A stretch of DNA of 64,000 nucleotides from Tubulanus polymorphus (taxonomy: Eukaryota > Animalia > Nemertea). A model generated the notes under the pieces. It made no database searches. It was not told the DNA's origin and saw nothing but the letters and a program-made list of their open reading frames with translations. The stretch spans positions 2,232,001 through 2,296,000 of the forward strand of contig NC_134031.1 in the NCBI RefSeq assembly GCF_964204645.1. The letters run 5' to 3'. This document shows positions 17,801 to 62,653 of this stretch, one piece after another (position 1 is the first letter of the stretch; every line of letters begins with the position of its first letter). Made by a program: the position numbers and the translations under genes.

Positions 17801-20800
17801 TCCCTGGACCCTTGAGAATGTGGATCATGAAAGGATTCAACAATTACCTCTGCAATGAGAATATCTCTATTGAGCTCTGGAGCGACTGGAGTTGGAGCAG
17901 GAGGTGGAGCTGCACTCGCCGCCTCCGCTTTATGGATAGCGTCATCGCGTTGTTCAACCGCTTCATCTCTCTGCTCAATCAACTGATTGATTCGATCTTC
18001 GTAACGTTTTTTCATCGTAGCTGCTTGACCTCGTAGATTATCATACTGTAAACAACAACAGATTACAGTATTTACTCAACAGTGTATTCAACTGAACGGT
18101 TTTATAGGAAACTGCCTACAAGTCATCACCCTAGCAGAAATTTAGCAATAAGGGTTGAAAGCATAGACAATCATCATTACTTTGAGATATTACTACAATT
18201 GTTTGATAACATTCAATGAATGGTGAATAGAATACAGACACAATGAACATGTTGATGCATGGAATACAGACAGTTCAAGCAGGGGTAGGGTTAAGGATTA
18301 AGAATTAAGAATGATCATTGCATTGTTCCTAATTTCCAGAACTTATGATTACGGCTAATGACATCTGTACGATCCATTTATTTGAAAAATCTCAGTTTCA
18401 ACATGATCATTAGGTAAAATTTCTCTGATTCTATCTCGTGAATCAGCTATGAGAAATCGATCATCTCCTCTATTGATCTGGGGTCGGGATGAGGTTTGTT
18501 TTATACCTTATCCTTCCACATTTTGAATTCATCGACCTGACCTTGTAAGTCGGAGACGTGGCGTATACTTTCAGAACGATGTGCTTTCATACCACCCAAC
18601 TATATACAACATGCAACATGCAACCAGTGATGAAAGAAACACTATGTGTAAGAAATCTATCTAAGTTTTTTCACCATAAGAATATTGAAATATTTTGTGG
18701 AATATTGTTGCCAGTTCTTTTTCAACGCTGAATACGAGCTGTAAACTGGATCTTAACTTATGTCTTTACCTTCTCTTCCATATCTTTGTATTTCTGACTG
18801 ATTTGTTCTTTCTCTTCGATGAGTTCTTTAATCGCTCGCGAGTGTTTATCGTCTAAACTCGTCTGCAGCCGGTCGTATTTACTCTGCCATTCGGCGTTCA
18901 ATTCCTGTTCGATTTGCGACACCTTAGAAAAACGAAAAATCTGAACATAACTCGAATCATTTCTCAAAAACGGAATGATATCGATTTGGAGTTGAATGTT
19001 AAACCCACAATGAAAAACTGAATAGTTTTAAACCATCGAAAATTTGCAAATCTGTCTCCAACTCCAAATTTTGTTTATGATATCTTCTAGTATTGAGGTA
19101 AAGTTAAAGATCGAAATTTCAAAGTGACCTTTGAGGTATGAAAAATTCGTAAAAAATAAACAAACATTTATAGGGCAGCTTTTTTCATTGAATATTTTCT
19201 GTAAAATAATATCTTTTCTCGAGTGATACTTTAACTAGTTGTTATTTACGCACCTGTTCAGAAACCGTGGAATCGGTTTGAGTTTTATGATGTTTCAGTT
19301 TGTTTCTCAAAGTATGAAGTTCGGCCTAAAGAAAACCATACATCTAATACAAACACTTATAACTGTTTTACTTAACTAGATACATGCATCAAACATGTAC
19401 ATGTAACATGCACATGTAGAGTTAGACATGAACATGTTACCTCGTGTTGCGTCTTCTGCTCCTCGAGATCTTCCTCGAAACGTTTCTTTTCTTCCACTGA
19501 TTTCTTCTTTCTCTCTGCCAAATTCTGGATGACAAAAATATCAAAACAAAATGAAAATTGAACGACGAAATTCCCCAATTCAAAAGTCGAGAGTCAAATT
19601 AACGCTTTACCTTTTCGAGAGTGGTGTTCGTTGTTTTCAAATCGGTCATCTCCTCTTGCAGCGTCGTTAATTGCGCTTCGACCGATTTACGCGTTAGTTT
19701 TTCGTCGCGTAACGTTTTCAACTGTTCTCCCAGCTTCGATTCTGATTCTGAAAATCGCAATTATCATCACATTTCACAAGTAAACGAATCGATATGATCG
19801 TAATCTTACAATTTTCGATAACGGAAATATAATTTTACGGTAAAGTACATGAACTGCGTCTCTGAGTTCTTGAGTTAAGAAATAGAATACGGGTTAGGGA
19901 AAGGGCAGGTAATGGTTAAGATAAAGGGGGTAAGTCAAGCATAAGGGGAAGGCTTATAGGATTGTTCCACAGGGTAAGGATATGATTAGGGGGTAGCAAG
20001 ATTAGAATAAGTCAGTAAGTTAAGGATAACGGTAGGTTATAATAAGGGTGCGTTTTAGGACAAGGAGTAGGTTTAGGGCAAGGGAAAGGATTAAGATAAC
20101 TGAAGTATAATGGTAAGCATTGAAAATAGGTGGGAAGATTAGATCGAGGATGGTTAGGATTTTTTATTTTTAACCATTGAAATTTTATTATAAACATAAC
20201 ATTAACAATATACAATGGACAACCACAAATCGTCCGGGGATGGTTAGGATAAGGGTTAGGTTTAGGATAAGGGTGTATTGAACGTACCGGCTATCTGTAA
20301 ACGTAATCGAGTTAGTTCCTCATTACTGCCTTCTTTACTCGTCAGCGTATCGTGCAACTGTTGTTTGATTTCCGAATTTTTCAATTTCATATCGCGTATT
20401 TCCAGCTGAAGATTGCTGACCTGTCCGGTCATATCGGCGAGCTGACTCGCCAGGGACACCTTCTCTTGCTCGAGCTGTAGAACGCGGCTGTGCGTCTGCG
20501 TTGTTGATAAATTCATCGATTGATGCCGATCCTCTAAATCTTTATTACTCCTTTCTACGTAACTATAAGCGAGAAATAATCTTTTAACCTTAACACGCGA
20601 ACACACAAAGTAGTCGCCTGGTTGCCGTCTTTAAATGCTAACCTTTGATTTCGCGATAATAATTCAGTTATTTTGTCGTTTTGTTGTTCAATTTTCTGGC
20701 TTTTTTCGAAGAGGTCTTTCTTTAGTCGGTCGTTATCCTGAATGATGCGCTGTAGATTCTGGAACAACATGGCCGTCTCCATGTTCGGCATATTATTGTG

Positions 20801-23800
20801 TACGGATGCTTGGCTCATTGTGTGCGTGTGAAGGCTATCGACCTGTAGACAAAAATATAAATGTAACGTCATTTGTTTATTCGAAATGAAGCTCCAACAT
20901 TTATAGACAGCATTTTGAAATACAACCTTATCCATAATTCTATCTAATTTATCAGTGACTTTGCTGATCGACAATCGAACTTCAGTATTCTGTTGTAATA
21001 GCACGGGTAGATGTGTCTCAGACGCCGTCGATGTCGTAGGTGGCGCCACTGTACTGGTAGCGGGCGGAGCTGCAGCTGAAATAGTCCAAATGTGCTGGAT
21101 TACTGGTAGTAAAGTAGCATTTCGCAACAAATTTATTTCACGGGAAAAAACTCAGCATCGAACCAAGATGCTACCTTAATCTAGTAAAAGTTCATTAACA
21201 TGTATAAAGGAACTTACCGGGGGCCTGTGTTTGATAATACTGCGGAATTTGTGGATTCTGAATGAATGGTTGAACAGGAGGCTGATAGACTGCTAGTGAT
21301 GCTGATGGAGGCTGCATGGCTAGAGAAATAACAAAATATTAGAGTCGATCTCAACCAACAGCACTGAGTGCCAGTCAGGGTAGCTGAGGTGGTAACAGGT
21401 GATAGACTCTTCTTTTTTTTTCTAAATTTTTTTTTTTAACACCCTCAACCTGCTAAGCGCCATGCAGGGCATTATAAGCAGGTTTCGATGTTTCTTTTTC
21501 CCAATGGGGGAGAGACCAGAGAAGAACCTTCCACCAAGAAACTCTGTCGCCACCAGGGTTTGAGCCCAATAACCTTGGATTGACGAGACCAGTGACCGGC
21601 GGCTTAAACCATTCGGCCACTGCGCCTCTCCTAGGTGATAGACTCGACCTACCCCTACACAGTCAAACTTCACAGAGAACAATGAAACCAGGTCGTGATG
21701 ATTTGGTGTTTAAACGTACCTTGCATAGGATTTGTCATTAAAGTCGGTGCGAAGATGTTCGGTTGTTGTTGCAATTGATGTTGTTGCAATTGATGTTGTT
21801 GTAACTGATGTTGTTGTAGCTGATGTTGTTGTTGTTGAATGATTGGAATCTGCTGCGTGACGACAGCTGGATGAGGATGGACCGGCGCCGCGTGGACCGG
21901 TTTGTGAGCGATGTGAGGTTTCGGAGGCGCGGTCGCCACAGGAACCGCCTCCGCGGTCGGGTGATGCTGAAAATAGGTTGAGCTACGCCTAATAAGGTAA
22001 TAAAAATTCCTGGTTCCATCTGTACTGATTTACGCGTAGTCTAAAATATCTAATTGCTTATTTTTCAAAATTTAAGGAGTTTCTGGCATTTTCTTAAACT
22101 TAAAACGAACCTTTAGAAGCATTTTCTGTTTAGGAGTTTTTAAGAAATCAAAGAGTTTAGTTAACGGAAATTACTACTGTACCTGTTCATCGTGTACAGC
22201 AGTTGTTACGTCCTCTTCATCTTCACCAGACGGTAAACTCTGAGTAGGTAACATCGCTTGACCCATCTTCGCGATTTTTGTAATCAATTTAGCTTTTTCC
22301 GATTTCGGTGACTGTTTGAATGAAAATGAAGAACAGCGTTCTTCAGATGTAACTTATGCCATACATAGATAAATATCGGTACATCTTTAAAGCATTAAAA
22401 ATTGATAAGCTGAAAAATTGAACTATTTCTTATTTGACTAAATTTCAGGACCCAGTTCCACAGTTCCACAGTTCCACAGTTCTGTGTTAAGATTTGACTC
22501 ATTGAAAATGAACTAATCTTAACTCAGAGTTAACTCTAACTCAGAACTGTGGAACTGGGTCCAGGGTTCTACCCAGATCGGGGACTCCTGTCCCTTCTCC
22601 CATTCTCAATGGGGATTGCCTTGTCTCAAGAGGTTCGTTGTGCCACTCGTCATCGGCAAGAATGAGACATCAAAAATTCAAATTCCCTGAGTTTTCAAGT
22701 TAAGAGATTTCAAAAGTTAAGCATTCCTGATATTTCCTGATCTGTAAGAACCCCCGAGTTCTCTACCGCAGTGTGGTTTCTGCTTTGTGACATGTTAATT
22801 CATCACGCGCTGAAAATCATCAGCTTCAAAAGCTGTGTAAAAGGCAGATAATATCATCGCAAAACGATACATACCTGGGATAGATGATCGGATAGTGATC
22901 GCGATCGTGTTTTCACATCGTCCGAGGCTGATTCCGGTTCTATGTCGACCGGAGGCGTTTCGGGAGCTGGGGAAGACTGCGATGAACTTTCCGGCGATTC
23001 TTTCTCTTTTAACAGTTTTACCTGAAAATCACGCGAATTATGAGCAAACCCGCGAACCGGCGCGCGTACACCCGACAAACTCAACTCACCCGAACAACTT
23101 CTATTTCAAATATAAGCGTGGCATTCGGCGGTACTCGATTACCGGCTCCTTTAGATCCGTACGCTAAATTCGAAGGAACGATCAACAAACGTTTACTGTT
23201 TTTACTCATACCTACAACTCCTTCATCCCAGCCCTGAAAATACAGATAACAAATATTCGACAATTAGATCTCAATGTCTCGCGCTAGCATTACTTCTAGT
23301 TTCATGGGTGGATATTAATATAGGTCCAACACAATATTTCGTATGAATCCCACATTGTTAACCCTTTCAGTGTGTCTACACCGCAGTCCGGTGTACGAAT
23401 CGGTGATAGATTTTGCTAGTACACCGCACTGCGGTGTATTGTTGTAATTAGTATTTATCTCTATTGAAAGATGGCAGTACATGTCAAACACAGTGAAATA
23501 TTAGTAACTAATGATACACTGCGCTGCGGTGTAGACGCACTATAGTGGTATTCCCGTTATTCAACACACTAGAAGGGAATTTTTCGAAATTTTTAAATTA
23601 TCTCCAGCACTAGGCCTATAGGGAATTGATAAGTCAGTACTGAAAGGGTTAATGGATTTATTTACGTTATTTGTATCACACTAAAACCATAGGGATTAGC
23701 GCAAAAAGGGTTTAAGTCTCAAGACATGTTTTCTTCCTCCGGTAAAAGGTATTTATTCATATTCGAAGCACTTTCGGAGCTAGGACCGTTATTAGATCGG

Positions 23801-26019
23801 AACTTGCGTACGTACCCGAATAACCTTTCCTTTTCCGACGCGGAATCGGAAAAGTTTATCAGAATTTGTGTTCGTGTCGAAAACGTCGCCGAATGTGAAG
23901 TTAACGAGCAGCCAGCCAGTGTAGCGTACTTCTACCGAATCGTCCCTCTCTAAACCGCCTCCTTCGCCGAGCGTTAAATCTTGACCGATCAACGATGAAT
24001 TATTACTGAAACTCGCTTTACATAAAGCAACCTAAAAAGCGTGGATCAAACGAAGTGAATTAGGACTCGCGATATCGAAAATTTTAAAACGAAAAATCTC
24101 GTGATCTTCTACACAGAGAATACACCAGTCAATGTAAATATTTTACACTGATATTTGGGTAAAACATCTCTACCGATCTTTAGAGATTTATTTGAAATGA
24201 ATCGCTCTGTTTCTCTGTGAAATACATTTCATTTTTTTTTTATAAATCTCTGGGTAGAAGCGTGTCACAGCCACTTTCCACCCATTTACAAATACCCTAA
24301 GTTTTCCATATATGATTACACAAAAACCTTCGAGTGAATCAGAGAAATTTATAGACCTAAAATGTTACAATTCATTCATTTTTCATTGAATCACGTCCTG
24401 ATAAAGAAACATGCCGTCAATAGCGTTATCTGAGTTATCCAGGTTTTTGGTACAATTTGTAAAATTTCCCGACTTTTCCCTGATTAGTTTTAGATTTTTC
24501 TGATTTCGGGAGTTTTCCAAATTTTCCAGTTCAGTGTCCACCATGTGTTATTAAATCTTCAATGTTGAGGGTCTTTTGATGAATCAAATGACATCAGTTA
24601 TATCTACCATCCTTGATTATCAGTCAAAAAGCCATCAGTCACGAAGAGTTACCTGTTTGAGAAAGTCCGAGATATTCTGCTCCGAGGGGAACATCAGCGA
24701 CCAGTTGACCTGTTTCTCATCGTAAAAGCTTAAATAATTATTTGGTTGCACCTGAAAAATACAGTCGACGAATTATGAAAATGACTATGATAATATTTAT
24801 AATATCTTGCTCACGATTCACGTTTGAAATGCAGCACTTACTGTGAGAGTAAGGTTGGAGGTTACTCTGGCATGCGTCAGTTGCTGTTGTTTGCTATAGT
24901 ACAACAGAATCTTGAACTGTGAAAAAACATTCATCAAATTCAGTGTACAAGCAATGGATTGAGACTAGCGAAAGATTGAACCCTTAGGGCGACCACTTTC
25001 CGCCAATTTACAAATTCCCCGATTTTTTCATGTTACAACACAAAATTCCAGAGTAAATCCAAGGTCAGTGGCCACCCTGCTTTTTATCAATTTGATTTTG
25101 ATGAAATTCATGTAGGCCTTAAATGAAATGAAAAGGTTGACTTACATCTTTTTCTTTATGATTAGCCAGAATGGCTGAACCAACTTGACCCTGACTCACG
25201 TAGGCACCATTCACTCTATAATACAGTAGAATAAGTTCCTAAATCTGGCAAATATAAAGCTATATATATATATATAAAGTAGCGACGATTGAAGTTTTAC
25301 TTACAGTTTATACGCATGAACTGCGCAAGCCTTCAATATTGCTGTCCCACCGGCAGCTTGCTCTGAAAATACCCATCATCAAAATAAGCATTTAATATCA
25401 CGCCAAATCGCGGAATTAATATTACAGCCAGACCCACTCTGCATTATGGTTTTCATATACCGTACCTTGTTTCTTTTTCGGTTGTTTTGGAGCGGTATAT
25501 GTCAATGATGCGTTGCCACTGGTGCTTGAAGCTTTGTCCATCCCGAACAACGAGTGCAGCTTAGACCTGAAAACATCAATCAAAGATATCGAGTTTCATC
25601 CATTGCAACAATTAAAATCATTACTTATACCCAAGATAACGATAAAAACATAGTTTTAAAATACAGATTTTGGCCTTAGACAAAGGGCTAATGATGATAT
25701 CGAGGATCTTTTACTTTTCTTTTAACTTTTCACATGTTTTTGGAGGAAAGACTACAGGGGCTCATAGATGAAGTTTGGGGCTGAAGTGTAGCTTAGATCA
25801 CCCAGTATCACGGGTCCTATTCACTCCTAACGTACAACTGGAAAGACAAGCCAACATCATCAGCTGATCATCAGAACAGCAAGAAGAAGGTCTGTCTTCA
25901 TTTTCCTTAATTTTATGGATGAAAATAAGTATGACAACTAGTTTTGTCGATATACCTCATTCTGCTACTTACCCGCCGGGTGATAGGAAGTCTTGATCGT
26001 CGTCGTCCCCTCCGAACAT
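14837..26019 (-). CDS. FKBP15: FK506-binding protein 15 (WASH/retromer-associated), ~26 exons
   Basis: First exon 26019-25973 encodes MFGGDDDDQDFLSPGG, followed by SKLHSLFG..YTAPKQPKK. The FKBP domain spans ~24031-23089 (VEVRYTGWL..FD..GKGKVIRGWDEGVVGM..LAYGSKG..VPPNATLIFEIEV). A coiled-coil region and a long acidic exon (~17520-16770) follow. The last exon 14911-14837 encodes DGRPQPPPPPLFGDDDDDDLDWLN*, matching the FKBP15 C-terminus. Confidence 0.95.
21410..21632 (-). mobile_element. tRNA-derived SINE in an FKBP15 intron
   Basis: On the minus strand: A-box TGGCCGAATGG, B-box-like GGCTCAAACC, and an A-rich tail. Flanked by the 13-bp direct repeat AGGTGATAGACTC (21397-21409 and 21633-21645), a TSD. 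Confidence 0.85.
22448..22562. mobile_element. MITE family B (TIR GGACCCAGTTCCACAGT)
   Basis: Terminal inverted repeats; a second copy lies at 50327-50436 in the opposite orientation. Confidence 0.8.
23362..23648. mobile_element. piggyBac-like MITE family A, copy 1
   Basis: TTAA|CCCTTTCAGT...ACTGAAAGGG|TTAA; homologous copies at 41302-41582 and 44249-44521. Confidence 0.88.
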
Positions 26020-34320: not shown

Positions 34321-35798
34321 ACCTGCCTCTGGGATGATGACAGCTAACTTTCTACATGAAATTCTGCAGTCGTCAAATAGCTCTGCTATTAGTTAAGTGT
34401 ATAGAAACCTTTCTGTATATAAGTCTGCAATATACAATCCGCCAAACTGCGTTGAAATTTTTAGCTCATTTCATTATTCGCGCTACGAACTCTTGAATCA
34501 CAGTATTATACACACTCGCGATCATACACATGATTAGATCATTCAGAGATTCGTAGACAAAAAGCGGGTTTAGCGTGTACATCTCTGGTCTCTGTGCAAT
34601 TAATCTTTTCAACTCTCTGCGGGATTTCGTCATTCATCAACTCATAAAACTGGTATTTCTCGTCCATAGGAATGTTCCTTTTGATTCTACAGCACGAAAC
34701 TCGAAACTACAGTAGAACTCACATGACTCGAGCTTCCGATGATAGGGACTGCTCCGAGTCCGATTTCTACGAATTAAGTAAATACCCAATTATGAATAAT
34801 AGTTTATACGTTCCAGGTTAAATGGACCGACTATTTCATCCGAATTAAATGAAAATCCGGATTGAAAAATCTGAATTAGGCGAGTCGAGATCTACTGCAC
34901 AGGGCCCAGTTTCACAAAAAGGTTTATCTCTTAAATCGATTTAATTTCTTCATTAATTCAGTTTATTTCAAATCGATTTAGGTCTTAATCCTTTTTTTGT
35001 GAACCTGGGACCTGAGTAAATCTCGCCTTATTCGCACATGGCTTACGCGGGACTTATGTATCCATAATGCCGACAACATTTACCTAGGACCAATTTCGCA
35101 TCAGGTTCGAATCCCTTCCAGGGGAGGATGGTATTCGCACAGAGAATCAATCGAGAAAGATCTACTCTAGATATCAAACTAAACCAAAATCGAAACCTTC
35201 AAATCAACAAATTCGATGTTTTTATTTCTCTTTCATAAGTTGACGAGTAACATGCATACAATAATATAAAGTAGATATCAACATCACTGTAAACTTGACA
35301 ATAACTTCTCAGCAAGAACGAATTCTACAGCACATAATTCCACCTTCAAAGACCAGTTCAGAAACAACATAGAACCATTGTTACCTTGTTTCTCCGCTCT
35401 GCTGAGCTTATAAGTTGACCCGGCCGGCCGCCTATCTACACTGTACATTACTTTTTTTAAAATCGTGATCAATTTTACCATAACAGCCCCGGCCGCTATA
35501 GAAATGAACTGTTTAGAAATGTTATCATATTTTACAAAAATGACCCCCGGCCGCTGCGGAGAAACAAGGTATCATTTGATTTTTGTTTAGCCTTAGTTAT
35601 AAAATTGTTAACATAGTACAACTCATCTTGTTATTTATTCTGAACCCGGTTAACACGGCTACTCTGCGATTAGTACACTGGGATATTGGATGATCTAAGC
35701 TACTTCACTTCAAATACGAGCCCCAGTGGTGGCAAGACAGATTCCAAACCAACCCCTACATCCACCCCTAAACTCGAGTAGAGAGTATACATTACCTA

Positions 35799-38700
35799 TC
35801 ACACATCGTCATCCTCACAAGAACCGTTTAATTCAAATTTATCGGCGACAGCTGACGCGACGGTCATCCCGCGGTCCAGTCTTATCAACGGTTTCAACGC
35901 AGTCATCAAACTATTGAACAATTCGGGAAACAACACCTCCTGCGACGCGAGGATCTGCTTCGTGCGATGTCGTTCTTTCGGCGCTTCGAAACACGCCGGA
36001 CAATTCTCGGCGATTATCGGCAATTTACGACCCTCGGCGAAGTCGCGCAGTTCGGTTTCGCGCACGTATACGAACGGTCGCACGACGCGTAAATCGCCTT
36101 CTCGTACGGTGTAGTTCGCTTTCATCGTTTGTAAACTTCCTGCGTGGAACGCGTTCATCAGGAAACTCTCGGCGAGATCGTCGAGGTGTTGCCCCATCGC
36201 GAGAACGTTATAACCCTCGCGGCGAGCGGTCGCGTAAATGCGACCGCGCTTCATGCGACTGCAAAAACTACAAATCGACGCGCACTCGTACGCGAGGTTC
36301 GCCGCCTGTTCGAGGATGTTTTGCTCCTCGTAGAAATACGGCACGCCGAGCGCGGAGAGGTAACGCTTCAACGGACTCGGGTCGTACGAGGCGGTGCGCG
36401 GGTCGACCGTCACGGCGCCGAATTCGAAACGGACGCCGCGCGACCTCGCGTAGAACTGATACTGACGTATCGTGTGCAGCAACGACAGCGAGTCTTTACC
36501 GCCCGATAAACAAACGAGAACGCGGTCGCCGTCCGCGATCATTTTATACTCTTCTAAAGCTCGTAAAGTCGGTTTGAAGATCTTTTTCGGAGGAGGGTGC
36601 CATTTTATTCCGCTGACCGTACTCGCCGCCGGAGCACTGTCCGAAATGTTTTCTTCTCTCGGTCTGAAGCAAGCATCGCCATCTTTACAAACGAATCCGC
36701 TGTTCGTCTTATGATCGAGTTTAGACTTTTGACTGGATTCCGAGCCATTGACTGTAACCGAATCTGGAGTTTTTGCTTCTTTCTCCGTCAAATCAGCACT
36801 TGAAGATTTACCGGTAGATTTAAAACCGTCTTCTCGACTTTTCTGAACAGTCGAATCAGGAATCGGAGTCGCTTCTACTTTCTCGGTAAAATCAGTGCTT
36901 GAAGAATTGCTTCTAGATTTTACTTTCTGAGTTATCTGATTCGTCAAATCAGTGCTTGAGGATTTAGTTTTAGATTTGCCTTTTCTAGCTTTTCGAGCAT
37001 TTTTCCGAGGATTTTGAGTTGCTTCTACTTTCTCGGTCAAATCAGTACTTGAAGAATTGCTTTTAGAATTGACTTTCTGATTCGTCAAATCAGTGCTTGA
37101 AGATTTAGTTTTAGATTCACTTTTTCTAGCTTTTCGAGCATTTTTTCGAGGATTTTGAGTTGCTTCAACTTTTACAGTCGAATCAGTACTTGAAGAATTG
37201 CTTTTAGAATTGACTTTCTGATTGGTCAAATCAGCGCTTGAAGATTTAGTTTCAAAATCGCTTTTTCGAGCTTTCTCGCTTGTCAAATCAGTATTAACTT
37301 CAATTTTCTGGGCTGGATCAGCGATTGAAGAACTGTCTTTACGAGCTTCCTCATTCATCATATCAGGATGATCGACAGCAGAATCAGGTAGAAATCCTGA
37401 CGTTAACATTTCAGTCATTCCCTCTGAAAAGCTTTTACCGTTATCCTGAATACTAATCATATTCGCGCTTTCATTAGATTTATCAACGAACTGATCACGG
37501 TCACTAGCTTTTTCAACATCACCGGCCATCTTATCAGTTTTATCAACGAACTGATCGCGGTCACTCGCTTTTTCAACATCACCGGCCATCTTATCAGTTT
37601 TATCAACGAACTGATCACGGTCACTCGCTTTTTCAACATCATCGGCCATCTTATCAGTTTTATCAACGAACTGATCACGGTCACTCGCTTTTTCAACATC
37701 ACCGGCCATCTTATCAGTTTCTAAGATCGGGTAGTGCTTGCGTTTCATTTTAATACGTTTCCCCGGATAGAACGTGGTCAGCACAGGCGGGTACTGCGAG
37801 GCTGTTTTGCGATCGTACAGCCACAACGCTGCCTCGCTGGGCAGCAGGAACCAGCGTATACACCGGCCGCGCTCGTCGAAGAACGGTTTTTGATCGGCGA
37901 TTTTCACTCGTTGCTTCGCGGCGTTTCGAAACACGTCATGTGCGAATTCGAGGCACTCTCCGAGCGACTCGGGAAGCGGGCCTTTCTCGTTCGTCGGCGG
38001 GTCGCGGAACCGCATTTCCGCGGCGCCGTACGATATATACCCCAACCACTTACGATCTTTGAACACTTGATGATCGCGATGGCGCCACTCTCCCGTTTCT
38101 GGATTGAAAATATACCGCGGTAGAATCCGCCAGGCGTTTTCGGCGACGAGTTTCACGGCTTCGAGAATGAAATCGACTTCGTCGTCGTTCGCGAAATACG
38201 GCAAATTCAAACGCGTGAAACCGGGACGCAGGATCTCGCGGTGGTTGTATTCCCGTTTACGCCGTAGATGAGTCCGATCGAGACGACTGTCCTCCACCAA
38301 TAGATCCTCGATGCGTTCGGCTAGATCCTCGTCGATACCGAGTAGATACTGCGCGTACGGACCGGCGCACGCGCAACCTCCGCGCGACTGGATCCCGAAC
38401 AGATCGTTTAGAACAGCGGCTACGAAGTTATGATGCAGAAACAGACCGGTCTCCGGGTGACGGACGACGAACGAGAAAATCGGCAAACGACGCAACGTCC
38501 GACTTCCGAGCAGCACCAAATTATCGACGTCCTTCCAATAATCGAAAGCCTTCGTGCAAAGTTTTTGATCTCGCGACGCGATCAGGTCCACGGTTACCGC
38601 ATCTTTCAACTGGAAAACTAACCCGGCTCGGATAGATTCAACGATCGCCGGCGTCCCACCTTCCTCGCGCATCTCAACTTCCTGTAGATAGCGGTGCGCG

Positions 38701-39638
38701 TCGGCGCGCACATAGAACACCGACCCGCCACCGGCGCACGACGGAACCGCATGTCGAAACAGACGTTTCTTAGCGACGAGCACGCCGGGGGTCGCGACGC
38801 CGCCGACGAATTTATGCGGCGATAGAAAGACTGCGTCTTTATAAACGTACGGCTGATCGTCGGTGGCGACCACCGGATTCATATCGATTGTTACGTACGG
38901 AGCCGCGGTCGCGTAATCCCAGAACGCGAGAGCTCGGCGACGGTGTAACAAGACGGTCACGCGATCCACGTCGACCAGCGTACCCGTTATATTCGACGCG
39001 GCGCTGAAACAACCGATCAACTCGCGACTGCAATCCGACCACTCATCCAGTCGCCGTTCTAAATCGTCGTAATCCACTGCGCCGTCGTCGGTCAAACCGA
39101 TCTCGACGACGGCGTACGCCACTTCGCGCCACGGTAGAAGATTCGAATGGTGCTCGTATGGTCCGACGAAAACGACCGGTCGCCGTTTGAAATCGAGCGC
39201 GTGGATTAATTTATGAACGGCCGCTGTCGAGCCGCTACCGACGAACAGAACGGCGTCGTGTTCGCCGGCGTTGGTCGCGTTACGGATTAAATCGCGCGCC
39301 TCGTGTCGATACAGCGTCGTTTGAAGCGCGGTGACCGTCGTCGTCGTGTGGGTATTCCCGTAATCGGGCAGGACCTCATCGCGGACGTAATCCTCGATGA
39401 AATTCAACGATTTTCCCGACGCAATGTAATCGCAGTAGACGGTCGAGCGTAGTCCGTACGGTCCGCTGAATACTTTCTCGCGACCGATCACGTTCCGGTT
39501 TATATACGACAATAATTCTTCGTTGGTGTTTTTATGGCGGTCTGGCTCGGCGTCGGCGGAAAACGCTTCTCGGTTCGGGTAGTCGTAGAATTTTCTGTTC
39601 GCTGCTTCAGGGATATTCGAGGCTTTAGATGATGACAT
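35799..39638 (-). CDS. Cysteine desulfurase (aminotransferase class V, SufS-like)-TtcA (tRNA 2-thiocytidine synthetase-like) fusion protein, single coding exon
   Basis: 1279-aa uninterrupted ORF. N-terminal PLP motifs: YGNTH, EHHSNLLPW, WDYATAAP, SPHKFVGG, EEGGTP and RGGCACAG. C-terminal motifs: PP-loop SGGKDS, CSFCSRMKRG, GQHLDDLAES and ENCPAC. Confidence 0.93.
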   Translation of the reverse strand: MSSSKASNIPEAANRKFYDYPNREAFSADAEPDRHKNTNEELLSYINRNVIGREKVFSGPYGLRSTVYCDYIASGKSLNFIEDYVRDEVLPDYGNTHTTTTVTALQTTLYRHEARDLIRNATNAGEHDAVLFVGSGSTAAVHKLIHALDFKRRPVVFVGPYEHHSNLLPWREVAYAVVEIGLTDDGAVDYDDLERRLDEWSDCSRELIGCFSAASNITGTLVDVDRVTVLLHRRRALAFWDYATAAPYVTIDMNPVVATDDQPYVYKDAVFLSPHKFVGGVATPGVLVAKKRLFRHAVPSCAGGGSVFYVRADAHRYLQEVEMREEGGTPAIVESIRAGLVFQLKDAVTVDLIASRDQKLCTKAFDYWKDVDNLVLLGSRTLRRLPIFSFVVRHPETGLFLHHNFVAAVLNDLFGIQSRGGCACAGPYAQYLLGIDEDLAERIEDLLVEDSRLDRTHLRRKREYNHREILRPGFTRLNLPYFANDDEVDFILEAVKLVAENAWRILPRYIFNPETGEWRHRDHQVFKDRKWLGYISYGAAEMRFRDPPTNEKGPLPESLGECLEFAHDVFRNAAKQRVKIADQKPFFDERGRCIRWFLLPSEAALWLYDRKTASQYPPVLTTFYPGKRIKMKRKHYPILETDKMAGDVEKASDRDQFVDKTDKMADDVEKASDRDQFVDKTDKMAGDVEKASDRDQFVDKTDKMAGDVEKASDRDQFVDKSNESANMISIQDNGKSFSEGMTEMLTSGFLPDSAVDHPDMMNEEARKDSSSIADPAQKIEVNTDLTSEKARKSDFETKSSSADLTNQKVNSKSNSSSTDSTVKVEATQNPRKNARKARKSESKTKSSSTDLTNQKVNSKSNSSSTDLTEKVEATQNPRKNARKARKGKSKTKSSSTDLTNQITQKVKSRSNSSSTDFTEKVEATPIPDSTVQKSREDGFKSTGKSSSADLTEKEAKTPDSVTVNGSESSQKSKLDHKTNSGFVCKDGDACFRPREENISDSAPAASTVSGIKWHPPPKKIFKPTLRALEEYKMIADGDRVLVCLSGGKDSLSLLHTIRQYQFYARSRGVRFEFGAVTVDPRTASYDPSPLKRYLSALGVPYFYEEQNILEQAANLAYECASICSFCSRMKRGRIYATARREGYNVLAMGQHLDDLAESFLMNAFHAGSLQTMKANYTVREGDLRVVRPFVYVRETELRDFAEGRKLPIIAENCPACFEAPKERHRTKQILASQEVLFPELFNSLMTALKPLIRLDRGMTVASAVADKFELNGSCEDDDV
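36870..37720 (-). repeat. In-frame coding repeats in the fusion linker: 4x60 nt (DKMAGDVEKASDRDQFVDKT) and ~3x141 nt (47-aa S/K-rich unit)
   Basis: Visible in both DNA (37479-37720; ~36870-37300) and translation. Confidence 0.9.
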
Positions 39639-40163
39639 TTTATTTCCTTATGTATAACCTTAAATAAATATTTTTAAATTAACATGAGATATTTGTCGAT
39701 AAAAGTTGAGAACTTCACCGTTTCAAAATTAAACGAAACCAGGCGGTGGTGACTTTTTGATTTTAGACAATGACATTTTGATCATTGGATTAATACGTAA
39801 AACCTGAAAAATTTTTTGAATAGATTAAGGGACAAATTGACACGATTTAAGATTAGGACCACACTATTTCATAATAAAAAGGAAAGCATGTGGGGGAAAA
39901 TGAATAAATATTAGTTGTTTTTGAATTGGTACGTTTTTTCGGAAATCTGTCCGTTTTTGGCTTAAATTTTAGTTCTGATCACTTTCAAAAAAGTTCCCTC
40001 TAATCAGTGGGTAATCAATACAATCATTTTGGAAAGTTAAATACCTGAATTTGTGCGTAATTTAGTCGTCAACCGAAGCTTTATGACGAAATGAAACCGA
40101 AAGGATGCCAAGTACGGGTGCGAAAATAGCGGGATTCGAACCTAAACTAGTATAACACATGTT

Positions 40164-40223: not shown

Positions 40224-40288
40224 CGAACACCGGCTATTTCCGTGTTTCCTCCTCCGCTGCCGCAGCTGTCATTGCCAGTAGTTCAAAC

Positions 40289-43200
40289 ATGGCGGCTGAG
40301 TCCACGTACTCGAGGAATTTACACGATAAAATGGGCGCGGCCGAGCAAACTAATCAAATACAATGGGCAGCAATATCATTAACACACGTAGAATATCCTA
40401 AAGGTATTTTCTGAACAGTTTTAATTCATATTCGTATATTAAAAAGCTTTTATTTCGTAATTAAATCGAGGTTTTCCACTTCTATGCCAGAAGAGGGCAA
40501 CACCGTACGGCCATCATGTTTTGATTGAAATATTAATCTGTTTTCCGAAAGCCAAAGTTTTTGGTTTCCGAAACTCCTTCCTCCCAAGAACAGTTGAGGA
40601 CTGGAACAACAGCAGTCAGGAGAAGGATATGTTCTGCTGTTTCAGTACGCACCACCTAATCGCACCATCGCGGTTCAGATGCAGTATCCCATATAGATGA
40701 TGTAGATGTTTTGATTAATTTTTTTATTTCAGGAGATTTTATCGGTTTCGTGTTGGCAATTATCAGTCTGACGCCAATCTGTATTCTAGTCGGTTTTGGA
40801 ACGTTGATTCTATTCAGGAGGGACTTACACACAGTATGTACTACTTATCATCCCTGACCCAATCTTTTTCTGACAGAAACAGTTCTTTAGGTTCGATTGA
40901 ACATTTAGTTTTGACAGTGGCCGAACTTGTACCACTTTTCAGTTTAATGTATTTTCCTCTTCACCCTTATAATAACCTAGGCCCAGATTCACGGAAAATG
41001 GTTTAATAATTGGACACTTAATCTAATGTTTTCAAAACAATTATAATTCAAACTTAACAGTAAGCATAAACTTTTTCATGGAACATCATCCTCAGCTTTT
41101 GTTATGAACAATTTTCACAGTGTATTGTAGAACACGTTGTGTATTAATCATAATTTCTACTGATGAATTTTTTCATTTTTTTTTCGGTAGATCTCGTATT
41201 TAATTGGTTTACTGCTGAATGAAGTCGTCAATTGGATCCTGAAACATCTAATTCAAGAATATCGTCCACTTAGACGTAAGTTGAAAAAACCACTGAATTA
41301 ACCCTTTCAGTGCTGACTAATTGATACCGTGTAGTGCTGGAGATAATTTGAAAATTTTCAAAAATTCCACCCTAGTATGTTGAATAACGGGAATACCACT
41401 ATAGTGCGTCTGCACCGCGGTGCGATGTATCGTTAGTGATTAGTATTTCACTATGTTTGACAGGTGATGCACTTATTCAAGAGAGATAATTACCAATTAC
41501 ATCTGTACACCACATTGCAGTGTACTAGCAAAATCTATAACTGATTTATACACCGCGCTGCGGTGTAGATGCACTGAAAGGGTTCATGGTTTACTGAGAT
41601 ACACAGTACTGATTTAGGTGTCTACAGTAATTGGGTTATGAAAGCGATGCAGGCGCTTCCTTGAACTGTGAAATGTTCTCCTTTAAAAACTCTTTATACG
41701 TGTATCCTGTTCAAGTGATTTATCCAGTTTACCAAGTTTGACTGTACAGTTATTATTATTAAACTGGAAATTCAGTTTGAAAATGATTCACAATATCTGT
41801 ATCCGCAAGAACTGATTTGTTTATGTGTGTTTTGAATAAATATCGAACGAAAATTGAATACTTCGACAAATGAAAGACCCTTTATTCCCTTCCTTTCACG
41901 ACTGGATAAAAATCAATATCCATGAAGAGCTGTATGTCGTATGAATTTGAGACTATGTTTTGCTATTTGAGGATGATAAATATAGCTGTGTTTGCTTGAT
42001 GATATATTGATTATTATTTTCTATAGAACGTGAGACTGTATTTTCTGAATACGGTATGCCTTCGAGTCATGCACAGTTTATGTGGTTTTATGCAGTCTAC
42101 TTGTCTTTCTTCCTTATCATTAGGTGAGTCCTGGCATATTGCCCTTTTGAATATCCGAAACTTGATGCTGAAATTGCCTCTTTGAATTTTGAAATTGAAT
42201 TTTTTTCTGATGAAGCGTGCCCCCCTTTTTGACGAAAAGGCTCCTTATAATAAATGGGCACTCGGAATTTGTGGGGGTCTTGTAAAACCCCTGGACTCAT
42301 CTTCTCTTGGGTTTACTGTGAAAGTCTAATCGATGCAGATCTGTGGGTTCTATAACTATATTCCAACACAATTATGGGTTGGGTTGGATTTAGATAAACT
42401 TTATTTGGACTGGAGGCTGTTTTTTCAGAATGCATAGAAATTATCATTTTGTTGATGAATTATGGAAGTATGCCATCGGATTAGTAGTCTATGGTTTAGC
42501 TTGTACTGTAGGATATAGCAGGTATGTGAAAAACCAAATATTCGGGCTTTTTTCAAGTTTGAAATTTATATAAATCCCACACCTACAAAGATGCTCTTGC
42601 ATATTAAGACAGTTGAAAATAGCTCAAAGAATTGAGTCATAGTTTTTCTTTTAAATTGTGCATTTTCATCACTTTAAAATGTGGATGGACAGTCTCTTGT
42701 ATATGGAAGCCAATTTCTTCATGTTTTTCTATGTCGGTGAATAACTGGAATTTAATGTGAGATAATTTATTTTTCAGAATATACCTCGGTTATCATTCGT
42801 TCAGCCAGGTGGCGGTTGGAGCTCTTATCGGACTCACATTAGGAACTATATGGTTTTCGACTGTACATTTAGTTTTAACGCCGTTTTTCCCTGTTTTAGC
42901 ATCTTGGTAAGTGTCGGACTGATAGTGATGCTAATAAATTTTTAAATTGTGTGCTCAACAATTTCAGTAATACAGCTCTTGACTACGCTCATATCATCTT
43001 TGCATATATCATAGAAACATATTGTATATTTCAATTGGTCTTGAATGTAATGAAATAAAAACTGTACTATCCTTTGATAAAAAAATGATGGTAGCCAAAT
43101 GTATGCTATTTTTTAAAGATGGCAATCTCCAAAAGTCAATCTGCATCATTGATCATTGAGGCCAGGTCGAGGAGATTTTTTTAAAGGAAAAGCCTCATGC

Positions 43201-54846: not shown

Positions 54847-57497
54847 TCACTGATCACTGACTTCATACAGTTTCAAGGACGGGTTGCCGTTTTTCAGATT
54901 CACTTGGCACACGGCGACACAATCGCCGACCCGGATAATTTGAGAAGTTTGACTATAAATCGTCGAATAAACAATTCTAGGATTCTTGAAGCGGTCGTTA
55001 GCAGCATCGAAGTTAAAGCATATAACCGCTCCTGAATTTTGGTAATGTGGATGCACGGATAGCAGGACGTTGCCTTCGTCGTAGGCGCACACGTAACCGA
55101 CCTGCGGGCGGAAATCCAGCCCGGTAACGTCGATCACGTTAAAATCCTGGATGAAATGGCCGTCGTGCGATAAATGCAACAGATCGCAAGAACGCTCGCA
55201 GAAAAGGAACATTTCGCCGCGCGCGTTTACGTCGAAAACACCGCTGGTGAACGTGCCGCGCGGCAGCCTTACTACTTTCATTTGTCCGCTTTTGACGAGA
55301 CTGGTAACCTTCGGTGAGAGATCTAACGGAGTGATGTGCACATTTTGAGCTGTTTGCGCGTAGATCGTATCGTTACGAATAACGAAATTCTGTATATCGA
55401 GCGGTATTATCTTCTCCATACATTCGCTATTTATCTCCTCTTTACGGGAACTAAACTTTCTCAAAACGAACCCGGATCTACTGTCCTTGTTCAGTACGTA
55501 TAGAAAACCGGAGCTGTCCGTTCCTAGGCCGTATATAGGACCGTAACGTTTCGAGTCAAAATGTAAGTAACTGTACAAAGCATCTTCATCCATACGATAT
55601 AAAGCATTAGATCGCCATTCGGTGCATATGATGTTCGGTATGGCATTAACGGAGTCGTGGTTTGGTATCGCGGTCATCAGAGTCAGTTTCAGAGCTGAAT
55701 TCGTCTGCGTTTTAAGCAGAAATGTTCCGATATTGCAAACCGATTCGGTTGTACTGGTACTCATTCGTGATTCGTCATTTTTATCGCGTTCCTCTAACTC
55801 GGTGATTCGCGCGCACAGAGATTCGTTTACGGTTCTGACGTGTTTCGATATTTCGACGTGTTTGCGGCGAACTTCGGCGACATCTTTTTCGAATTGTTTG
55901 AATCGGTTTTCGAGATTTTCGTTGAATTCGGGGCAGCGAATCGGAGCCGAAACCGTCGGAAAATTCACCTTCCACGAATGTTGATTTCCTTGTGTAATGA
56001 CGGCTAAATGAAGACCTAACGCTATTGATTGTGGACTGCGCTGAATCAATTCTCCATATTTCTTGGCGATATTCTCATTGTCACACCTGACAACAAACGC
56101 TTGCTTCATCGGGCTATGACTGAATGATATTGCGAGTTCGGGTACTTCGACACCAGGCGGCGCTTCTCTCCATTCTAGCATCACCTAAAAAGAATCAATT
56201 ACAAAAGACATATTAAATTTACAATTAAGAATATTACCATTTGTAATGAAAATATAACAAAAAAATTTTGACCTAGATATCAAATATCAATCGGTCAGCC
56301 CAAATTGGAAAGGACCAATTTGGAACGAACTTTTTGCAGTTCGTGAACATTTGGTCCGGTCCAAACTTAAAGCGGGCCAAACTTTTAGCAGTCTAAATAA
56401 TGTAGTGTGATCGCACCTTATATCAAGTGTCTAAAGAAAATGTTCTTACTGGTCTTCTATTTGACTTCAATGCATGTGTCTAAATAGTGGAAAAGTGGTT
56501 TGATCAACTTGGCGCATTTCGATTTTGTTGGCAGGTTTCAAAAAATTGATAGAAAATATTGTCTCAGAGATAAGCGATTCCCATATTGTTTGATCGTGTT
56601 AAACGTTTTTTTTTTTTAAATTTTTATTCCAGATTCACATCGGGACACAAAGAGACTGCACGCGATGAAGTCTGTCCTTCAGAGTGTACACTATACCTTA
56701 TGCAATATGATTGTATACATTCTGTACGTCCTGATAGGTTACCAGAAGCTTCAAATTGTATTCGCGTGGTGAGGCGATCAAGGACCATGACAATGATTTA
56801 ACGATTTTATGTCCCATTCCATAATATTCAAGGCCTTGAATTGACCAGTGCCCTATGTAAGGAATTTTGAGGACCGCTAATGAACCCTGTTCTGTGGATT
56901 TTCAATTATTTGAGCTCTTTACCGATGATCTAATAACATAATTCTAAGGTTAAGTTTATTTCATATAGAATTCTATCCTATATTTCATACCGAAGAAAGA
57001 TATCAAAACATATACTTTAAGCTTACATGTACTACTTTGAATTTGTGGGAAAAGCATCATGACCAGGACTAACAAAACGACCTTGGACCTGCCTGACTAT
57101 CTTAAATACGACAATACGTGATTTTCGTTCACCAAAGAATATATCTCAACTTTCAACTCACCTCGTTGATTGGCTTTGCTTGAATCGTCAACATCTGCCC
57201 GGTGAAAATTGCTCTCAATTTCTCCTCCACCGCCGACTCCAACGCGGTCGTCCACATCGTTACAACTAGGTGTAACAAATTACCGCGAACTTGTGTCGAA
57301 CCGCAGTCGAGATCTACCAACGGCTGATAGAAAAACTTCTGAACCGTGCGCTTTTTATTTTGCGAGTCGGACCACACGTTGATTTTCCGTTCCCCGAACG
57401 TAATAGCCAGCTCGTGTATTAGTTCTTCTTTGTCGCTGCTACAGATTTTTTTCGAAGACGACATCGTTCCAACGCTGGTTCTAGCAGACATAGCCAT
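54847..57497 (-). CDS. Uncharacterised ~557-aa protein: N-terminal globular domain, coiled coil, C-terminal beta-propeller-like (NHL/six-bladed-like) region
   Basis: Exon 57497-57162 (phase 0, GTGAGT donor) joins 56184-54847 in frame. Heptad segment FNENLENRFKQFEKDVAEVRRKH..ITELEER, then beta-rich repeats (IYGLGTDSSGFLYVL, FDVNARGEMFLF, VCAYDEGNVLLS). Confidence 0.7.
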
Positions 57498-60963: not shown

Positions 60964-62653
60964 ATGAATTATGGTAGGTTTTTACTCGTATTTTCACTTA
61001 AATGTTACTGTTTGAAATATCTACCAAGGTTGGCCTTTAATAGTGACCTCGTCGCTTGCTGAAACCTTGACCTAAAGCATTTTTCAAGAAGGCTGAAGTC
61101 CGATACAAATCTGATTTTTACGCTTCGTCACCGAAACCCTGTGTCCAGTTTCACGAAAATGATCAATTCCTAAGTTGATTTAGCTAGATCGATAAAGAAA
61201 TTAATCGATCTAAGAACTGAAAAAAAACCTTTTTGAGAAATTCCATTTTCCATTCACGTGTGTCATGTAAGTGTCTCCTGACGGAGATAGGTAAGATGTA
61301 TACCTTATTATCAAAGTCAACTTTAATTTTTATTTCAATTTTGGAACATATTGCATGATAGTATCTTACAGCCATATATCTATTATATGTCAAGGTAAAT
61401 ATGAAGGACACACACTTCACGCTTCAGACTTACAACGTCAACGCAGATATGAATACTCCCCAAAATAGTCATATCGTAATTCGTCTTGATTTCACCTTGC
61501 ATTTACACTGATCGGGTAAAACCTTTTTTTATTTTCAGTTGCGAAGGTACTTAAACAGTACAAGGTCACTATATTGGCGTTGATATTTGGGTTGGTAATA
61601 TATCTGTCCCTGCTGAGACGAAAAGGCGTCAAAACGGTTTATCATCACCGCGTGTCTATAGGCGCGCTGTTCCCGCCACCGCCTCCACCGAGCAGGGTCT
61701 CCACCGTCCTCGAAGGTTTACCGATTCCCGCAGTTTACTACGGCGATTACGCGACCGCCATCGAATACCTGCACCGTCGCGACTACGTCACGCCCCGCAA
61801 CTGTTCGGCCACTATACCGAAAATAATCCACCAGACGTGGAAGGATGAGATGATTCCGATTAAATTCAAATCGTCGGTCGAATCGATCATCGCCAATCAC
61901 CCTGATTTCGAATACTGGATGTGGACTGATGCCCTCGCCGAGGAATTCATCAGTAAAAAGTTCCCGAGTTTTCTACCGGTTTATAAAAGCTACCCGAAAG
62001 CGATCAACCGCGCCGACGCGATTCGATATTTTGTCCTTTACGAGTATGGAGGAGTTTACGCCGATTTGGATATCGTATCGTTACGTTCTTTAAACGATCT
62101 GTTGGGCACTCATACGTTCCTCATACCCGAGGACCATCCATTCCATACTCACATCATATTCGGTTTAAATCGTATTCCGTTGAACGCTTTCATGATGTCT
62201 ATTCCTAAACACCCGTTTATGAAAGCGGTTATAACTCACTTAGCCGAATATTCCAAAAGGAAGAATATTCTCTACACAGCCGGGCCAATGATGCTCGACT
62301 TAGAATTGAGTAGATATGAAGATGTATTGGGCGATAGGAAAGACAATTCACTTTGCGACGCCGTGTATATGGGCAAGTGGCAGAATTTCATACCGCTGTT
62401 TTTAGACAACGCCGTCACGATCGCGGCGTTAAAACACAAATGCGGCCGAAAAGACGGCAATCCGCGAAAGTTGAAAGACTGCGACTTTCTACGCGCGAGA
62501 AATTTCACGCAGCTCACTCTACCCGATACGGCTTACACTAGACACAAGTTCTCGCACGTCCATGAGGCGAAGACGCGAAAACTGATGTTTCATATAGCGG
62601 ACGTGGCCGGTGAATCGTTGAGAAATGTCTCTCAACTGTTAGAGAACATATAG
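60964..62653 (+). CDS. Type II membrane glycosyltransferase, GT32 DXD family (SUR1/CSH1/OCH1-like), 374 aa
   Basis: Micro-exon 60964-60973 (MNY) plus 61539-62653. N-terminal TM segment, Pro-rich stem, IPKIIHQTWK, RADAIRYFVLYEYGGVYADLD, NAFMMSIPKHPF and TAGP. Confidence 0.88.

What the first reader, a model, noticed from the sequence alone, without database searches (positions are those of the whole stretch)
35799..39638. Animal cysteine desulfurase-TtcA fusion: a possible self-contained tRNA 2-thiocytidine system
Seen: one ORF joins a group-II desulfurase (PLP Lys in SPHKF, catalytic-type Cys in RGGCACAG) to a PP-loop ATPase with SGGKDS, CSFC, HLDD and CPAC. Known: bacterial TtcA has this PP-loop plus two-CxxC layout, binds [4Fe-4S], makes s2C32 and depends on IscS-derived sulfur. 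Eukaryotic Ncs6/CTU1 instead carries extra Zn-finger CxxC pairs, which are absent here, and uses Urm1. To my knowledge s2C is described from bacterial and archaeal tRNA, not animal tRNA. Inference: the protein carries its own sulfur donor and may install s2C (or another thio-nucleoside) on animal RNA independently of NFS1/Urm1.
Basis: partly seen in the sequence, partly recalled or inferred. Interest (0 to 1): 0.92.

Follow-up and report, generated by a model that had tools for sequence, protein, structure and literature searches.

The report
Desulfurase-TtcA fusion, candidate tRNA thiocytidine enzyme
This ribbon-worm gene joins an enzyme that pulls sulfur from cysteine to an enzyme that puts sulfur on tRNA; it most likely makes 2-thiocytidine, a mark first reported in an animal in September 2026 by a preprint that also named this gene family, but its activity has not been tested.

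Summary
Observation confirmed. One intact, transcribed, intronless 1279-aa ORF joins a SufS-fold cysteine desulfurase (K276, C424) through a disordered linker to a TtcA-type PP-loop domain with two CxxC motifs and no zinc fingers. NCBIfam scores: TtcA 193 bits, TilS 54, TtuA 45, NcsA 23.

It is not a first sighting. bioRxiv 10.64898/2026.09.27.754811 reports s2C32 in Aplysia tRNA-Lys(UUU) and names this fusion ('IscS-TtcA') as the candidate enzyme, without enzymology.

Added here: (1) the fusion is pan-eukaryotic, not animal-specific (Amoebozoa, choanoflagellate, Rhodelphis, ciliate, dinoflagellates, apicomplexans, nematode); (2) the catalytic cysteine that the preprint could not find aligns to C424; (3) the N-domain is a separate SufS-like family, not IscS; (4) the TtcA domain groups with an unfused proteobacterial subfamily; (5) AlphaFold pTM values and a fusion-specific R529-x-W531 motif suggest the two domains dock.

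Best reading (0.7): an s2C32 synthase with a built-in sulfur donor. 'Independent of NFS1' is overstated, because the Fe-S cluster probably still comes from ISC/CIA. Verdict: new member of a just-described, biochemically untested family.

The parts
35799..39638 (-). Single-exon ORF, 1279 aa: desulfurase, linker, TtcA-type domain
38139..39506 (-). PLP-dependent SufS-fold desulfurase core (about aa 45-500): H163, D241, H275, K276, R476; T244 replaces the PLP-binding Gln of SufS
38811..38813 (-). K276, PLP Schiff-base lysine (= SufS K226, IscS K206)
38367..38375 (-). C422-x-C424; C424 aligns to SufS C364, CsdA C358 and IscS C328 (persulfide cysteine); C422 is an extra invariant cysteine
37779..38138 (-). 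Family-specific C-terminal extension of the desulfurase (about aa 501-620), folded in the models
38046..38054 (-). R529-x-W531 motif: 98-99% conserved in fused proteins, under 20% in stand-alone paralogues, absent in bacterial relatives; candidate docking or RNA-contact surface
36618..37748 (-). S/K/D/T-rich disordered linker (about aa 631-1007), longer than the family median
37479..37720 (-). In-frame 60-bp tandem repeat, 4 copies (20-aa unit), in the linker
36866..37274 (-). In-frame 141-bp tandem repeat, 2.8 copies, in the linker
35859..36617 (-). TtcA-type PP-loop thiotransferase domain (aa 1008-1260)
36489..36506 (-). PP-loop SGGKDS (aa 1045-1050)
36261..36272 (-). First CxxC (C1123, C1126 = E. 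coli TtcA C122, C125)
36177..36188 (-). HLDD (aa 1151-1154)
35991..36002 (-). Second CxxC (C1213, C1216 = C210, C213 of the MG1655 TtcA)
35634..35639 (-). Only AATAAA in the 3' flank scanned (35401-35798); an RNA-run contig ends at 35583: likely polyadenylation signal

Best explanation
The protein is a cytosolic tRNA C32 2-thiolase that carries its own sulfur donor. Shown by sequence and model: all catalytic residues of both enzymes are present and conserved. Inferred steps: (1) PLP on K276 takes L-cysteine and leaves a persulfide on C424 plus alanine; (2) the TtcA domain holds a three-cysteine [4Fe-4S] cluster (C1123, C1126, C1216) with one open iron; (3) the PP-loop uses ATP to adenylate O2 of C32; (4) the docked desulfurase, in the same chain or across a dimer, hands its sulfur to the open iron after reduction by a thiol (perhaps through C422), and the bound SH displaces AMP to give s2C32. 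No Urm1, SufE or rhodanese carrier is needed; the cluster itself probably comes from ISC/CIA. Likely substrate, by analogy with Aplysia: tRNA-Lys(UUU).
For: TtcA model 193 bits against TilS 54, TtuA 45, NcsA 23. 31% identity to E. coli TtcA over 236 aa, E 2e-39; TilS E 9e-6; TtuA E 1e-12 and NcsA E 8e-6 in a separate search. All four CxxC cysteines align with TtcA and are invariant. TtcA with IscS, cysteine, ATP and DTT makes s2C in vitro (PMC4081106), so a desulfurase is the right partner. Best folds are SufS (Foldseek E 2e-26; VIA Z 33.6). Two plasmid-borne bacterial relatives of the N-domain lie beside sulfur-handling genes: a Blh-type persulfide dioxygenase plus TauE in Rhizobium, an MBL-rhodanese gene in Rhodococcus. 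s2C32 was measured in Aplysia, where this fusion was the E. coli TtcA hit reported. The fusion is kept across eukaryotic supergroups. AlphaFold pTM 0.84 (sponge orthologue) and 0.67 (this protein) exceed my rough undocked ceilings of 0.72 and 0.55. The R-x-W-L motif is in 162 of 195 fused and 7 of 92 stand-alone proteins. Precedent: ABA3/MOCOS.
Against: No enzyme assay, knockout or complementation was found for any member. The domain is below the TtcA equivalog cut-off (193 vs 272) and sits on a long stem apart from tested TtcA. The Aplysia substrate, tRNA-Lys(UUU), is not among the bacterial TtcA substrates (Arg, Ser) and is a CTU1/CTU2 substrate. The s2C report is one unreviewed preprint, one tRNA, one species. 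The nearest bacterial subfamily has no desulfurase gene nearby, so the domain type can work unfused. Docking is inferred from pTM only; I had no coordinates and no active-site distance. Nothing shows s2C in this species.
Confidence: 0.7

Rival explanations
1. The C-terminal domain makes s2C32, but the desulfurase only builds or repairs the oxygen-labile cluster, or passes sulfur through a separate carrier, instead of being the direct turnover donor.
For: Type II desulfurases usually depend on partner acceptors such as SufE, SufU or CsdE (PMC8300815). The TtcA cluster is oxygen-sensitive. Unfused bacterial relatives exist.
Against: Predicted docking and the fusion-specific motif. Both domains stay intact together across eukaryotes.
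Confidence: 0.12
2. The enzyme thiolates a different nucleoside, RNA or molecule, and Aplysia s2C32 arises elsewhere, for example as a side reaction of CTU1/CTU2 on tRNA-Lys(UUU).
For: Separate subfamily on a long stem, with no tested member. The substrate class differs from bacterial TtcA. No other eukaryotic s2C report was found although the gene is widespread.
Against: The nearest characterised enzyme by every measure is TtcA. s2C was found at the TtcA position in an animal that carries the fusion.
Confidence: 0.12
3. The chain is a polyprotein or co-expression device: the linker is cut, or the two domains act independently (the preprint raises this).
For: Long, variable, disordered linker; 248-908 aa between the RxGCxC and PP-loop motifs across the family. 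Stand-alone paralogues of the desulfurase exist in animals.
Against: Short-linker orthologues exist; the linker aligns poorly; pTM indicates a defined relative placement; one motif is specific to fused copies.
Confidence: 0.04
4. The locus is a bacterial contaminant, a mis-assembly or a dead retrocopy.
For: The gene is intronless and richer in GC than its flanks, whereas orthologues are spliced.
Against: It lies on a 21.6-Mb animal chromosome among spliced genes. It groups with animal orthologues, nearest Owenia at 79%. It is transcribed, and 11 of 18 listed variants in the folded domains are synonymous. All catalytic residues are intact.
Confidence: 0.02

Closest known systems
Aplysia californica 'IscS-TtcA' fusion LOC101861551 (bioRxiv 10.64898/2026.09.27.754811)
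   Same: Same domain order, PLP lysine, PP-loop, C-CSFC-CPAC pattern and variable linker; proposed s2C synthase. Gastropod orthologues are 72-77% identical over the TtcA domain.
   Different: Intronless here, with a repeat-expanded linker. [quoted passage not shown] The Aplysia sequence itself was not held, so no direct alignment was made.
E. coli / Salmonella TtcA (s2C32 synthetase)
   Same: PP-loop, both CxxC motifs and the H-x-DD motif in register; no zinc fingers; 31% identity.
   Different: Below the equivalog cut-off; separate clade shared with an unfused proteobacterial subfamily; fused donor instead of IscS in trans; reported eukaryotic substrate is tRNA-Lys rather than Arg/Ser.
SufS / CsdA (group II cysteine desulfurases)
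   Same: Fold (TM 0.87 over the target), PLP residues, short catalytic loop, catalytic cysteine position.
   Different: RGGCAC instead of RXGHHCA, Thr for the PLP-binding Gln, a C-terminal extension of about 120 aa, 25-26% identity; its own family with bacterial members at 40-52%.
ABA3 / MOCOS (molybdenum cofactor sulfurase)
   Same: Works like it: an N-terminal desulfurase makes a persulfide and passes sulfur to a fused C-terminal acceptor domain (PMC3916724, PMC8931425).
   Different: The acceptor is a TtcA-type Fe-S enzyme, not MOSC; no MOSC hit. Kinship of the desulfurase domains was not tested.
CTU1/Ncs6, NcsA, TtuA
   Same: PP-loop thiotransferase fold with cluster-binding cysteines.
   Different: No zinc fingers; far lower scores; these use Urm1, SAMP or TtuB carriers and modify U34 or U54.

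Membership tests
TtcA family (broad) | PP-loop SGGKDS | tested here: met
   aa 1045-1050; invariant in 235 aligned homologues
TtcA family (broad) | Two CxxC motifs in register, no terminal zinc fingers | tested here: met
   C1123/1126/1213/1216 align to C122/125/210/213
TtcA family (broad) | Closer to TtcA than to TtuA, NcsA or TilS | tested here: met
   HMM and pairwise scores. In trees the TtuA-like and TilS rows are very long branches with unstable placement, so the trees do not root the family.
TtcA equivalog (PRK10696, E. coli type) | Score of at least 272 bits | tested here: not met
   193 bits. The bacterial sister subfamily scores 201-219 and an annotated C. difficile TtcA 221, so the cut-off is narrow; this is a separate subfamily.
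TtcA family (broad) | Binds [4Fe-4S] and makes s2C32 | not testable with these tools
   Only indirect: s2C32 in Aplysia
CTU1/Ncs6/NcsA/TtuA | N- and C-terminal zinc-finger CxxC pairs | tested here: not met
   Cysteine list; a TtuA-like control has five CxxC
CTU1/Ncs6/NcsA/TtuA | Family HMM score | tested here: not met
   TtuA 45 of 450, NcsA 23 of 500. No eukaryotic CTU1 sequence was held, so CTU1 was tested only through NcsA.
TilS | TilS HMM cut-off and C-terminal domains | tested here: not met
   54 of 93.6 bits; no TilS_C hit
Group II cysteine desulfurase (SufS/CsdA-like) | Aminotransferase class V fold, PLP lysine, catalytic cysteine on a short loop | tested here: met
SufS / CsdA proper | RXGHHCA consensus and family cut-off | tested here: not met
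   RGGCAC; 109 of 475 bits; separate clade
IscS / NFS1 (group I) | SSGSACTS and the long catalytic-loop insertion | tested here: not met
   No IscS model hit; the insertion is lacking
Cysteine desulfurase (function) | Persulfide and alanine formed from L-cysteine | not testable with these tools
   Residues and bacterial gene context only
Eukaryotic desulfurase-TtcA fusion ('IscS-TtcA' of the preprint) | Desulfurase-linker-TtcA order with the C-CSFC-CPAC pattern; groups with animal fusions in both domains | tested here: met

The most novel reading that the evidence does not exclude
An ancient, possibly LECA-age, third eukaryotic tRNA-thiolation route: a carrier-free enzyme in which a dedicated desulfurase docks on a TtcA domain and loads sulfur directly on the cluster, so that s2C32 is common in invertebrates and protists (nematodes, apicomplexans, ciliates, amoebae) and has been missed because the usual model organisms were thought to lack it.
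Probability: 0.4. Interest if true: 0.78.

Novelty: new member of a known kind. Interest (0 to 1): 0.5.

Why it matters
s2C32 was held to be prokaryotic until a September 2026 preprint, and the enzyme that makes it in eukaryotes is still unproven. This family is the obvious candidate. Its presence in a Caenorhabditis species, a dictyostelid, a ciliate and a coccidian close to Toxoplasma makes the question testable by genetics. How sulfur reaches the TtcA cluster is unresolved even in bacteria, and a natural donor-acceptor fusion with a predicted interface is a good system for it. The ribbon-worm copy adds little by itself beyond intron loss and linker repeats.

Tried and rejected
CTU1/TtuA/TilS identity: rejected by scores and cysteine layout. 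Rooting the TtcA tree on TilS or a TtuA-like protein failed: both are very long branches and moved between runs; the AU tests and two careful searches did not finish. The direction of transfer between eukaryotes and the proteobacterial subfamily is unresolved: bacteria nest in eukaryotes, the reverse. A bacterial operon or fusion as precursor: no desulfurase within about 5 kb (less on short contigs) in 9 genome loci, none within 8 kb in Thermithiobacillus; this small sample is not proof of absence. Viral copies: none. Conserved synteny: none in Lingula, Capitella, Dimorphilus, Oscarella or C. brenneri; the PAP2 gene beside a protist orthologue does not match the window's PAP2 gene. Literature: 'IscS-TtcA' occurs only in the preprint; two short-term searches were noise; Jager 2004 is not held. 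No tRNA gene lies in the window. The spliced neighbour genes were not joined or searched as joined models.
Full report
Observation. The window holds one ORF at 35799-39638 on the minus strand, 1279 aa. It is identical to the gene called on a 21.6-Mb chromosome of GCA_964204645.2; earlier scan notes name this genome as the ribbon worm Tubulanus polymorphus. Pfam finds Aminotran_5 at 68-431 and ATP_bind_3 at 1040-1208. Between the domains lies an S/K/D/T-rich linker of about 375 aa with in-frame 60-bp and 141-bp tandem repeats, disordered in the model.

The gene is real and expressed. Run X1 behaves as RNA: one contig skips the GT-AG intron 40401-40731 of the head-to-head PAP2-family neighbour, and coverage is zero over 39728-40121, where run X3 is continuous. 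Listed X1 contigs cover most of the ORF, no joint falls inside it, and one contig ends at 35583, just past the only AATAAA of the scanned 3' flank. No contig spans the linker repeats, so a full-length transcript is inferred. Of the listed variants, 11 of 18 in the folded domains and 6 of 13 in the linker are synonymous (a partial list). Orthologues in Owenia (26 kb, at least 15 exons), Lingula, Oscarella and C. brenneri are spliced and have other neighbours. The single-exon state here is therefore probably derived, most likely by retroposition (inference).

C-terminal domain. NCBIfam gives TtcA 193 bits (cut-off 272), TilS 54, TtuA 45 and NcsA 23. It is 31% identical to E. coli TtcA over 236 aa (E 2e-39); TtuA gives E 1e-12 and NcsA 8e-6 among solved structures. 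C1123, C1126, C1213 and C1216 align to TtcA C122, C125, C210 and C213 and are invariant in 238 homologues. Bouvier et al. (PMC4081106) found both cysteines of the first CxxC and a third, their Cys222, essential as [4Fe-4S] ligands; I take Cys222 to be the last cysteine of the second CxxC, C1216 here. They also showed that IscS, cysteine, ATP and DTT suffice in vitro. Zinc-finger pairs are absent. The closest prokaryotic relatives (49-61% identity) are unfused proteins of about 250 aa from beta- and gammaproteobacteria, several of them sulfur oxidisers or symbionts, which also miss the TtcA cut-off and have no desulfurase nearby. Eukaryotic fusions plus this subfamily are separated from other TtcA by a long branch with SH-aLRT 99-100. 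The TilS and TtuA-like outgroups were too long to root the tree, the direction of transfer changed between runs, and no true CTU1 sequence was available. The assignment to TtcA thus rests on scores and motifs more than on a rooted tree.

N-terminal domain. K276, H163, D241 and H275 match SufS K226, H123, D200 and H225. C424 aligns to SufS C364, CsdA C358 and IscS C328. R476 is invariant and lies in the strand where SufS has its substrate-binding arginine (inference; my alignment was cut before it). The best structural matches of a family model are SufS enzymes (Foldseek E 2e-26; VIA Z 33.6, rmsd 2.2 over 398 residues). It is not SufS proper: RGGCAC replaces RXGHHCA (PMC8300815), Thr replaces the PLP-binding Gln, and there is a C-terminal extension. 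It belongs to an unnamed family with bacterial members at 40-52% identity and a stand-alone animal paralogue clade. In Rhizobium the relative lies directly upstream of a Blh-type persulfide dioxygenase and a TauE exporter, and in Rhodococcus near an MBL-rhodanese gene; a third locus, in Sagittula, lies in an ABC-transport and catabolic operon. This fits persulfide chemistry without proving it.

Distribution. The fusion occurs from sponges to tunicates and arthropods. Of 76 long cluster representatives hit by the TtcA domain, 75 also carry the desulfurase. Named members include Vermistella and Polysphondylium (Amoebozoa), Choanoeca, Rhodelphis, Stentor, Amoebophrya, Biecheleria, Gregarina, Besnoitia and Caenorhabditis brenneri. 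The fusion is therefore old and pan-eukaryotic. No vertebrate, fungal or land-plant member was named in the listed rows, but only the top 120-150 hits are shown and many are unnamed; the preprint mentions bird hits without data.

Do the domains touch? AlphaFold2 of the 901-aa sponge orthologue gave pTM 0.84, and residues 61-1260 of this protein gave 0.67 with 380 disordered residues. A rough calculation puts the ceilings for undocked domains at 0.72 and 0.55 and typical docked values at 0.85 and 0.66. R529 and W531 in the desulfurase extension are 98-99% conserved in fused proteins, under 20% in stand-alone paralogues and absent in bacteria. Both results point to an interface, but I had no coordinates and the models were single chains.

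Mechanism. Shown: the anatomy and conservation. Inferred: cysteine gives a persulfide on C424; a thiol reductant, possibly helped by the invariant C422, releases the sulfur to the open iron of the cluster; ATP adenylates C32; the bound SH displaces AMP. The N-terminus has several acidic residues in its first 35 positions and does not look like a mitochondrial presequence (inspection), which fits a cytosolic tRNA substrate. The cluster most likely still comes from ISC/CIA (own knowledge), so independence from NFS1 is doubtful. Confidence 0.7. Rivals: cluster repair or relayed sulfur (0.12), another product with Aplysia s2C made by CTU1/CTU2 (0.12), a split or independent pair (0.04), artefact (0.02).

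Prior knowledge. Reviews list s2C for bacteria and archaea only (PMC7694415; PMC5372739). Huang et al. (bioRxiv 10.64898/2026.09.27.754811) detected s2C32 in Aplysia tRNA-Lys(UUU) by LC-MS/MS, named LOC101861551 an IscS-TtcA fusion, found it in 28 molluscs and proposed that it is the dedicated s2C enzyme. They did no enzymology and did not identify the catalytic cysteine. That is the only paper holding the term in the searched library. ABA3/MOCOS and bacterial desulfurase-rhodanese fusions are precedents for a desulfurase fused to its acceptor.

Verdict. A real, conserved and probably active gene. It works like TtcA with a tethered donor and is a member of the eukaryotic desulfurase-TtcA fusion family, but not of the E. 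coli TtcA equivalog, of SufS or of IscS. The core idea was published two months ago, so novelty is 'new member of a known kind'. Interest stays at 0.5 because the enzyme is unproven and the breadth, catalytic cysteine and docking reported here make it directly testable.

Noticed in passing
window 40270-40835 (+): Spliced PAP2-family gene (dolichyl-diphosphatase-like by my reading) starts head-to-head about 630 bp from the fusion's start codon; a shared promoter is possible. Its first intron 40401-40731 is spliced in runs X1 and X5.
   Followed up: partly
window 35377-35577: Very high-copy repeat with GC-rich palindromic cores just 3' of the gene (summed contig depth above 100,000 in two runs); MITE- or SINE-like.
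   Followed up: no
P0415, P0419, P0420, P0425, P0457, P0500: A stand-alone animal paralogue clade (SH-aLRT 99) of the same desulfurase family, with intact PLP lysine and RGGCAC motif but without the R-x-W motif; function untested.
   Followed up: partly
L002-L009, L033-L035: Unfused TtcA subfamily in beta- and gammaproteobacteria, 49-61% identical to the eukaryotic domain and below the TtcA cut-off; a simple bacterial model for the subfamily's specificity.
   Followed up: partly
Pieces were scanned separately and not joined.
   Followed up: no
window 54847-56184 (-) and 61574-62653 (+): A 445-aa ORF with no Pfam hit, and a 359-aa ORF with a DXD glycosyltransferase domain (PF04488).
   Followed up: no
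window 15000-26000 (-): Part of an FKBP15-like multi-exon gene (called gene runs over the end of L001; ORF pieces near 16735-21130 probably belong to it).
   Followed up: no
P0326, P0335: Some fused homologues, including an ant (Temnothorax) protein, deviate from the exact PP-loop or CxxC motifs in a pattern scan; possible divergence or decay in some lineages.
   Followed up: no
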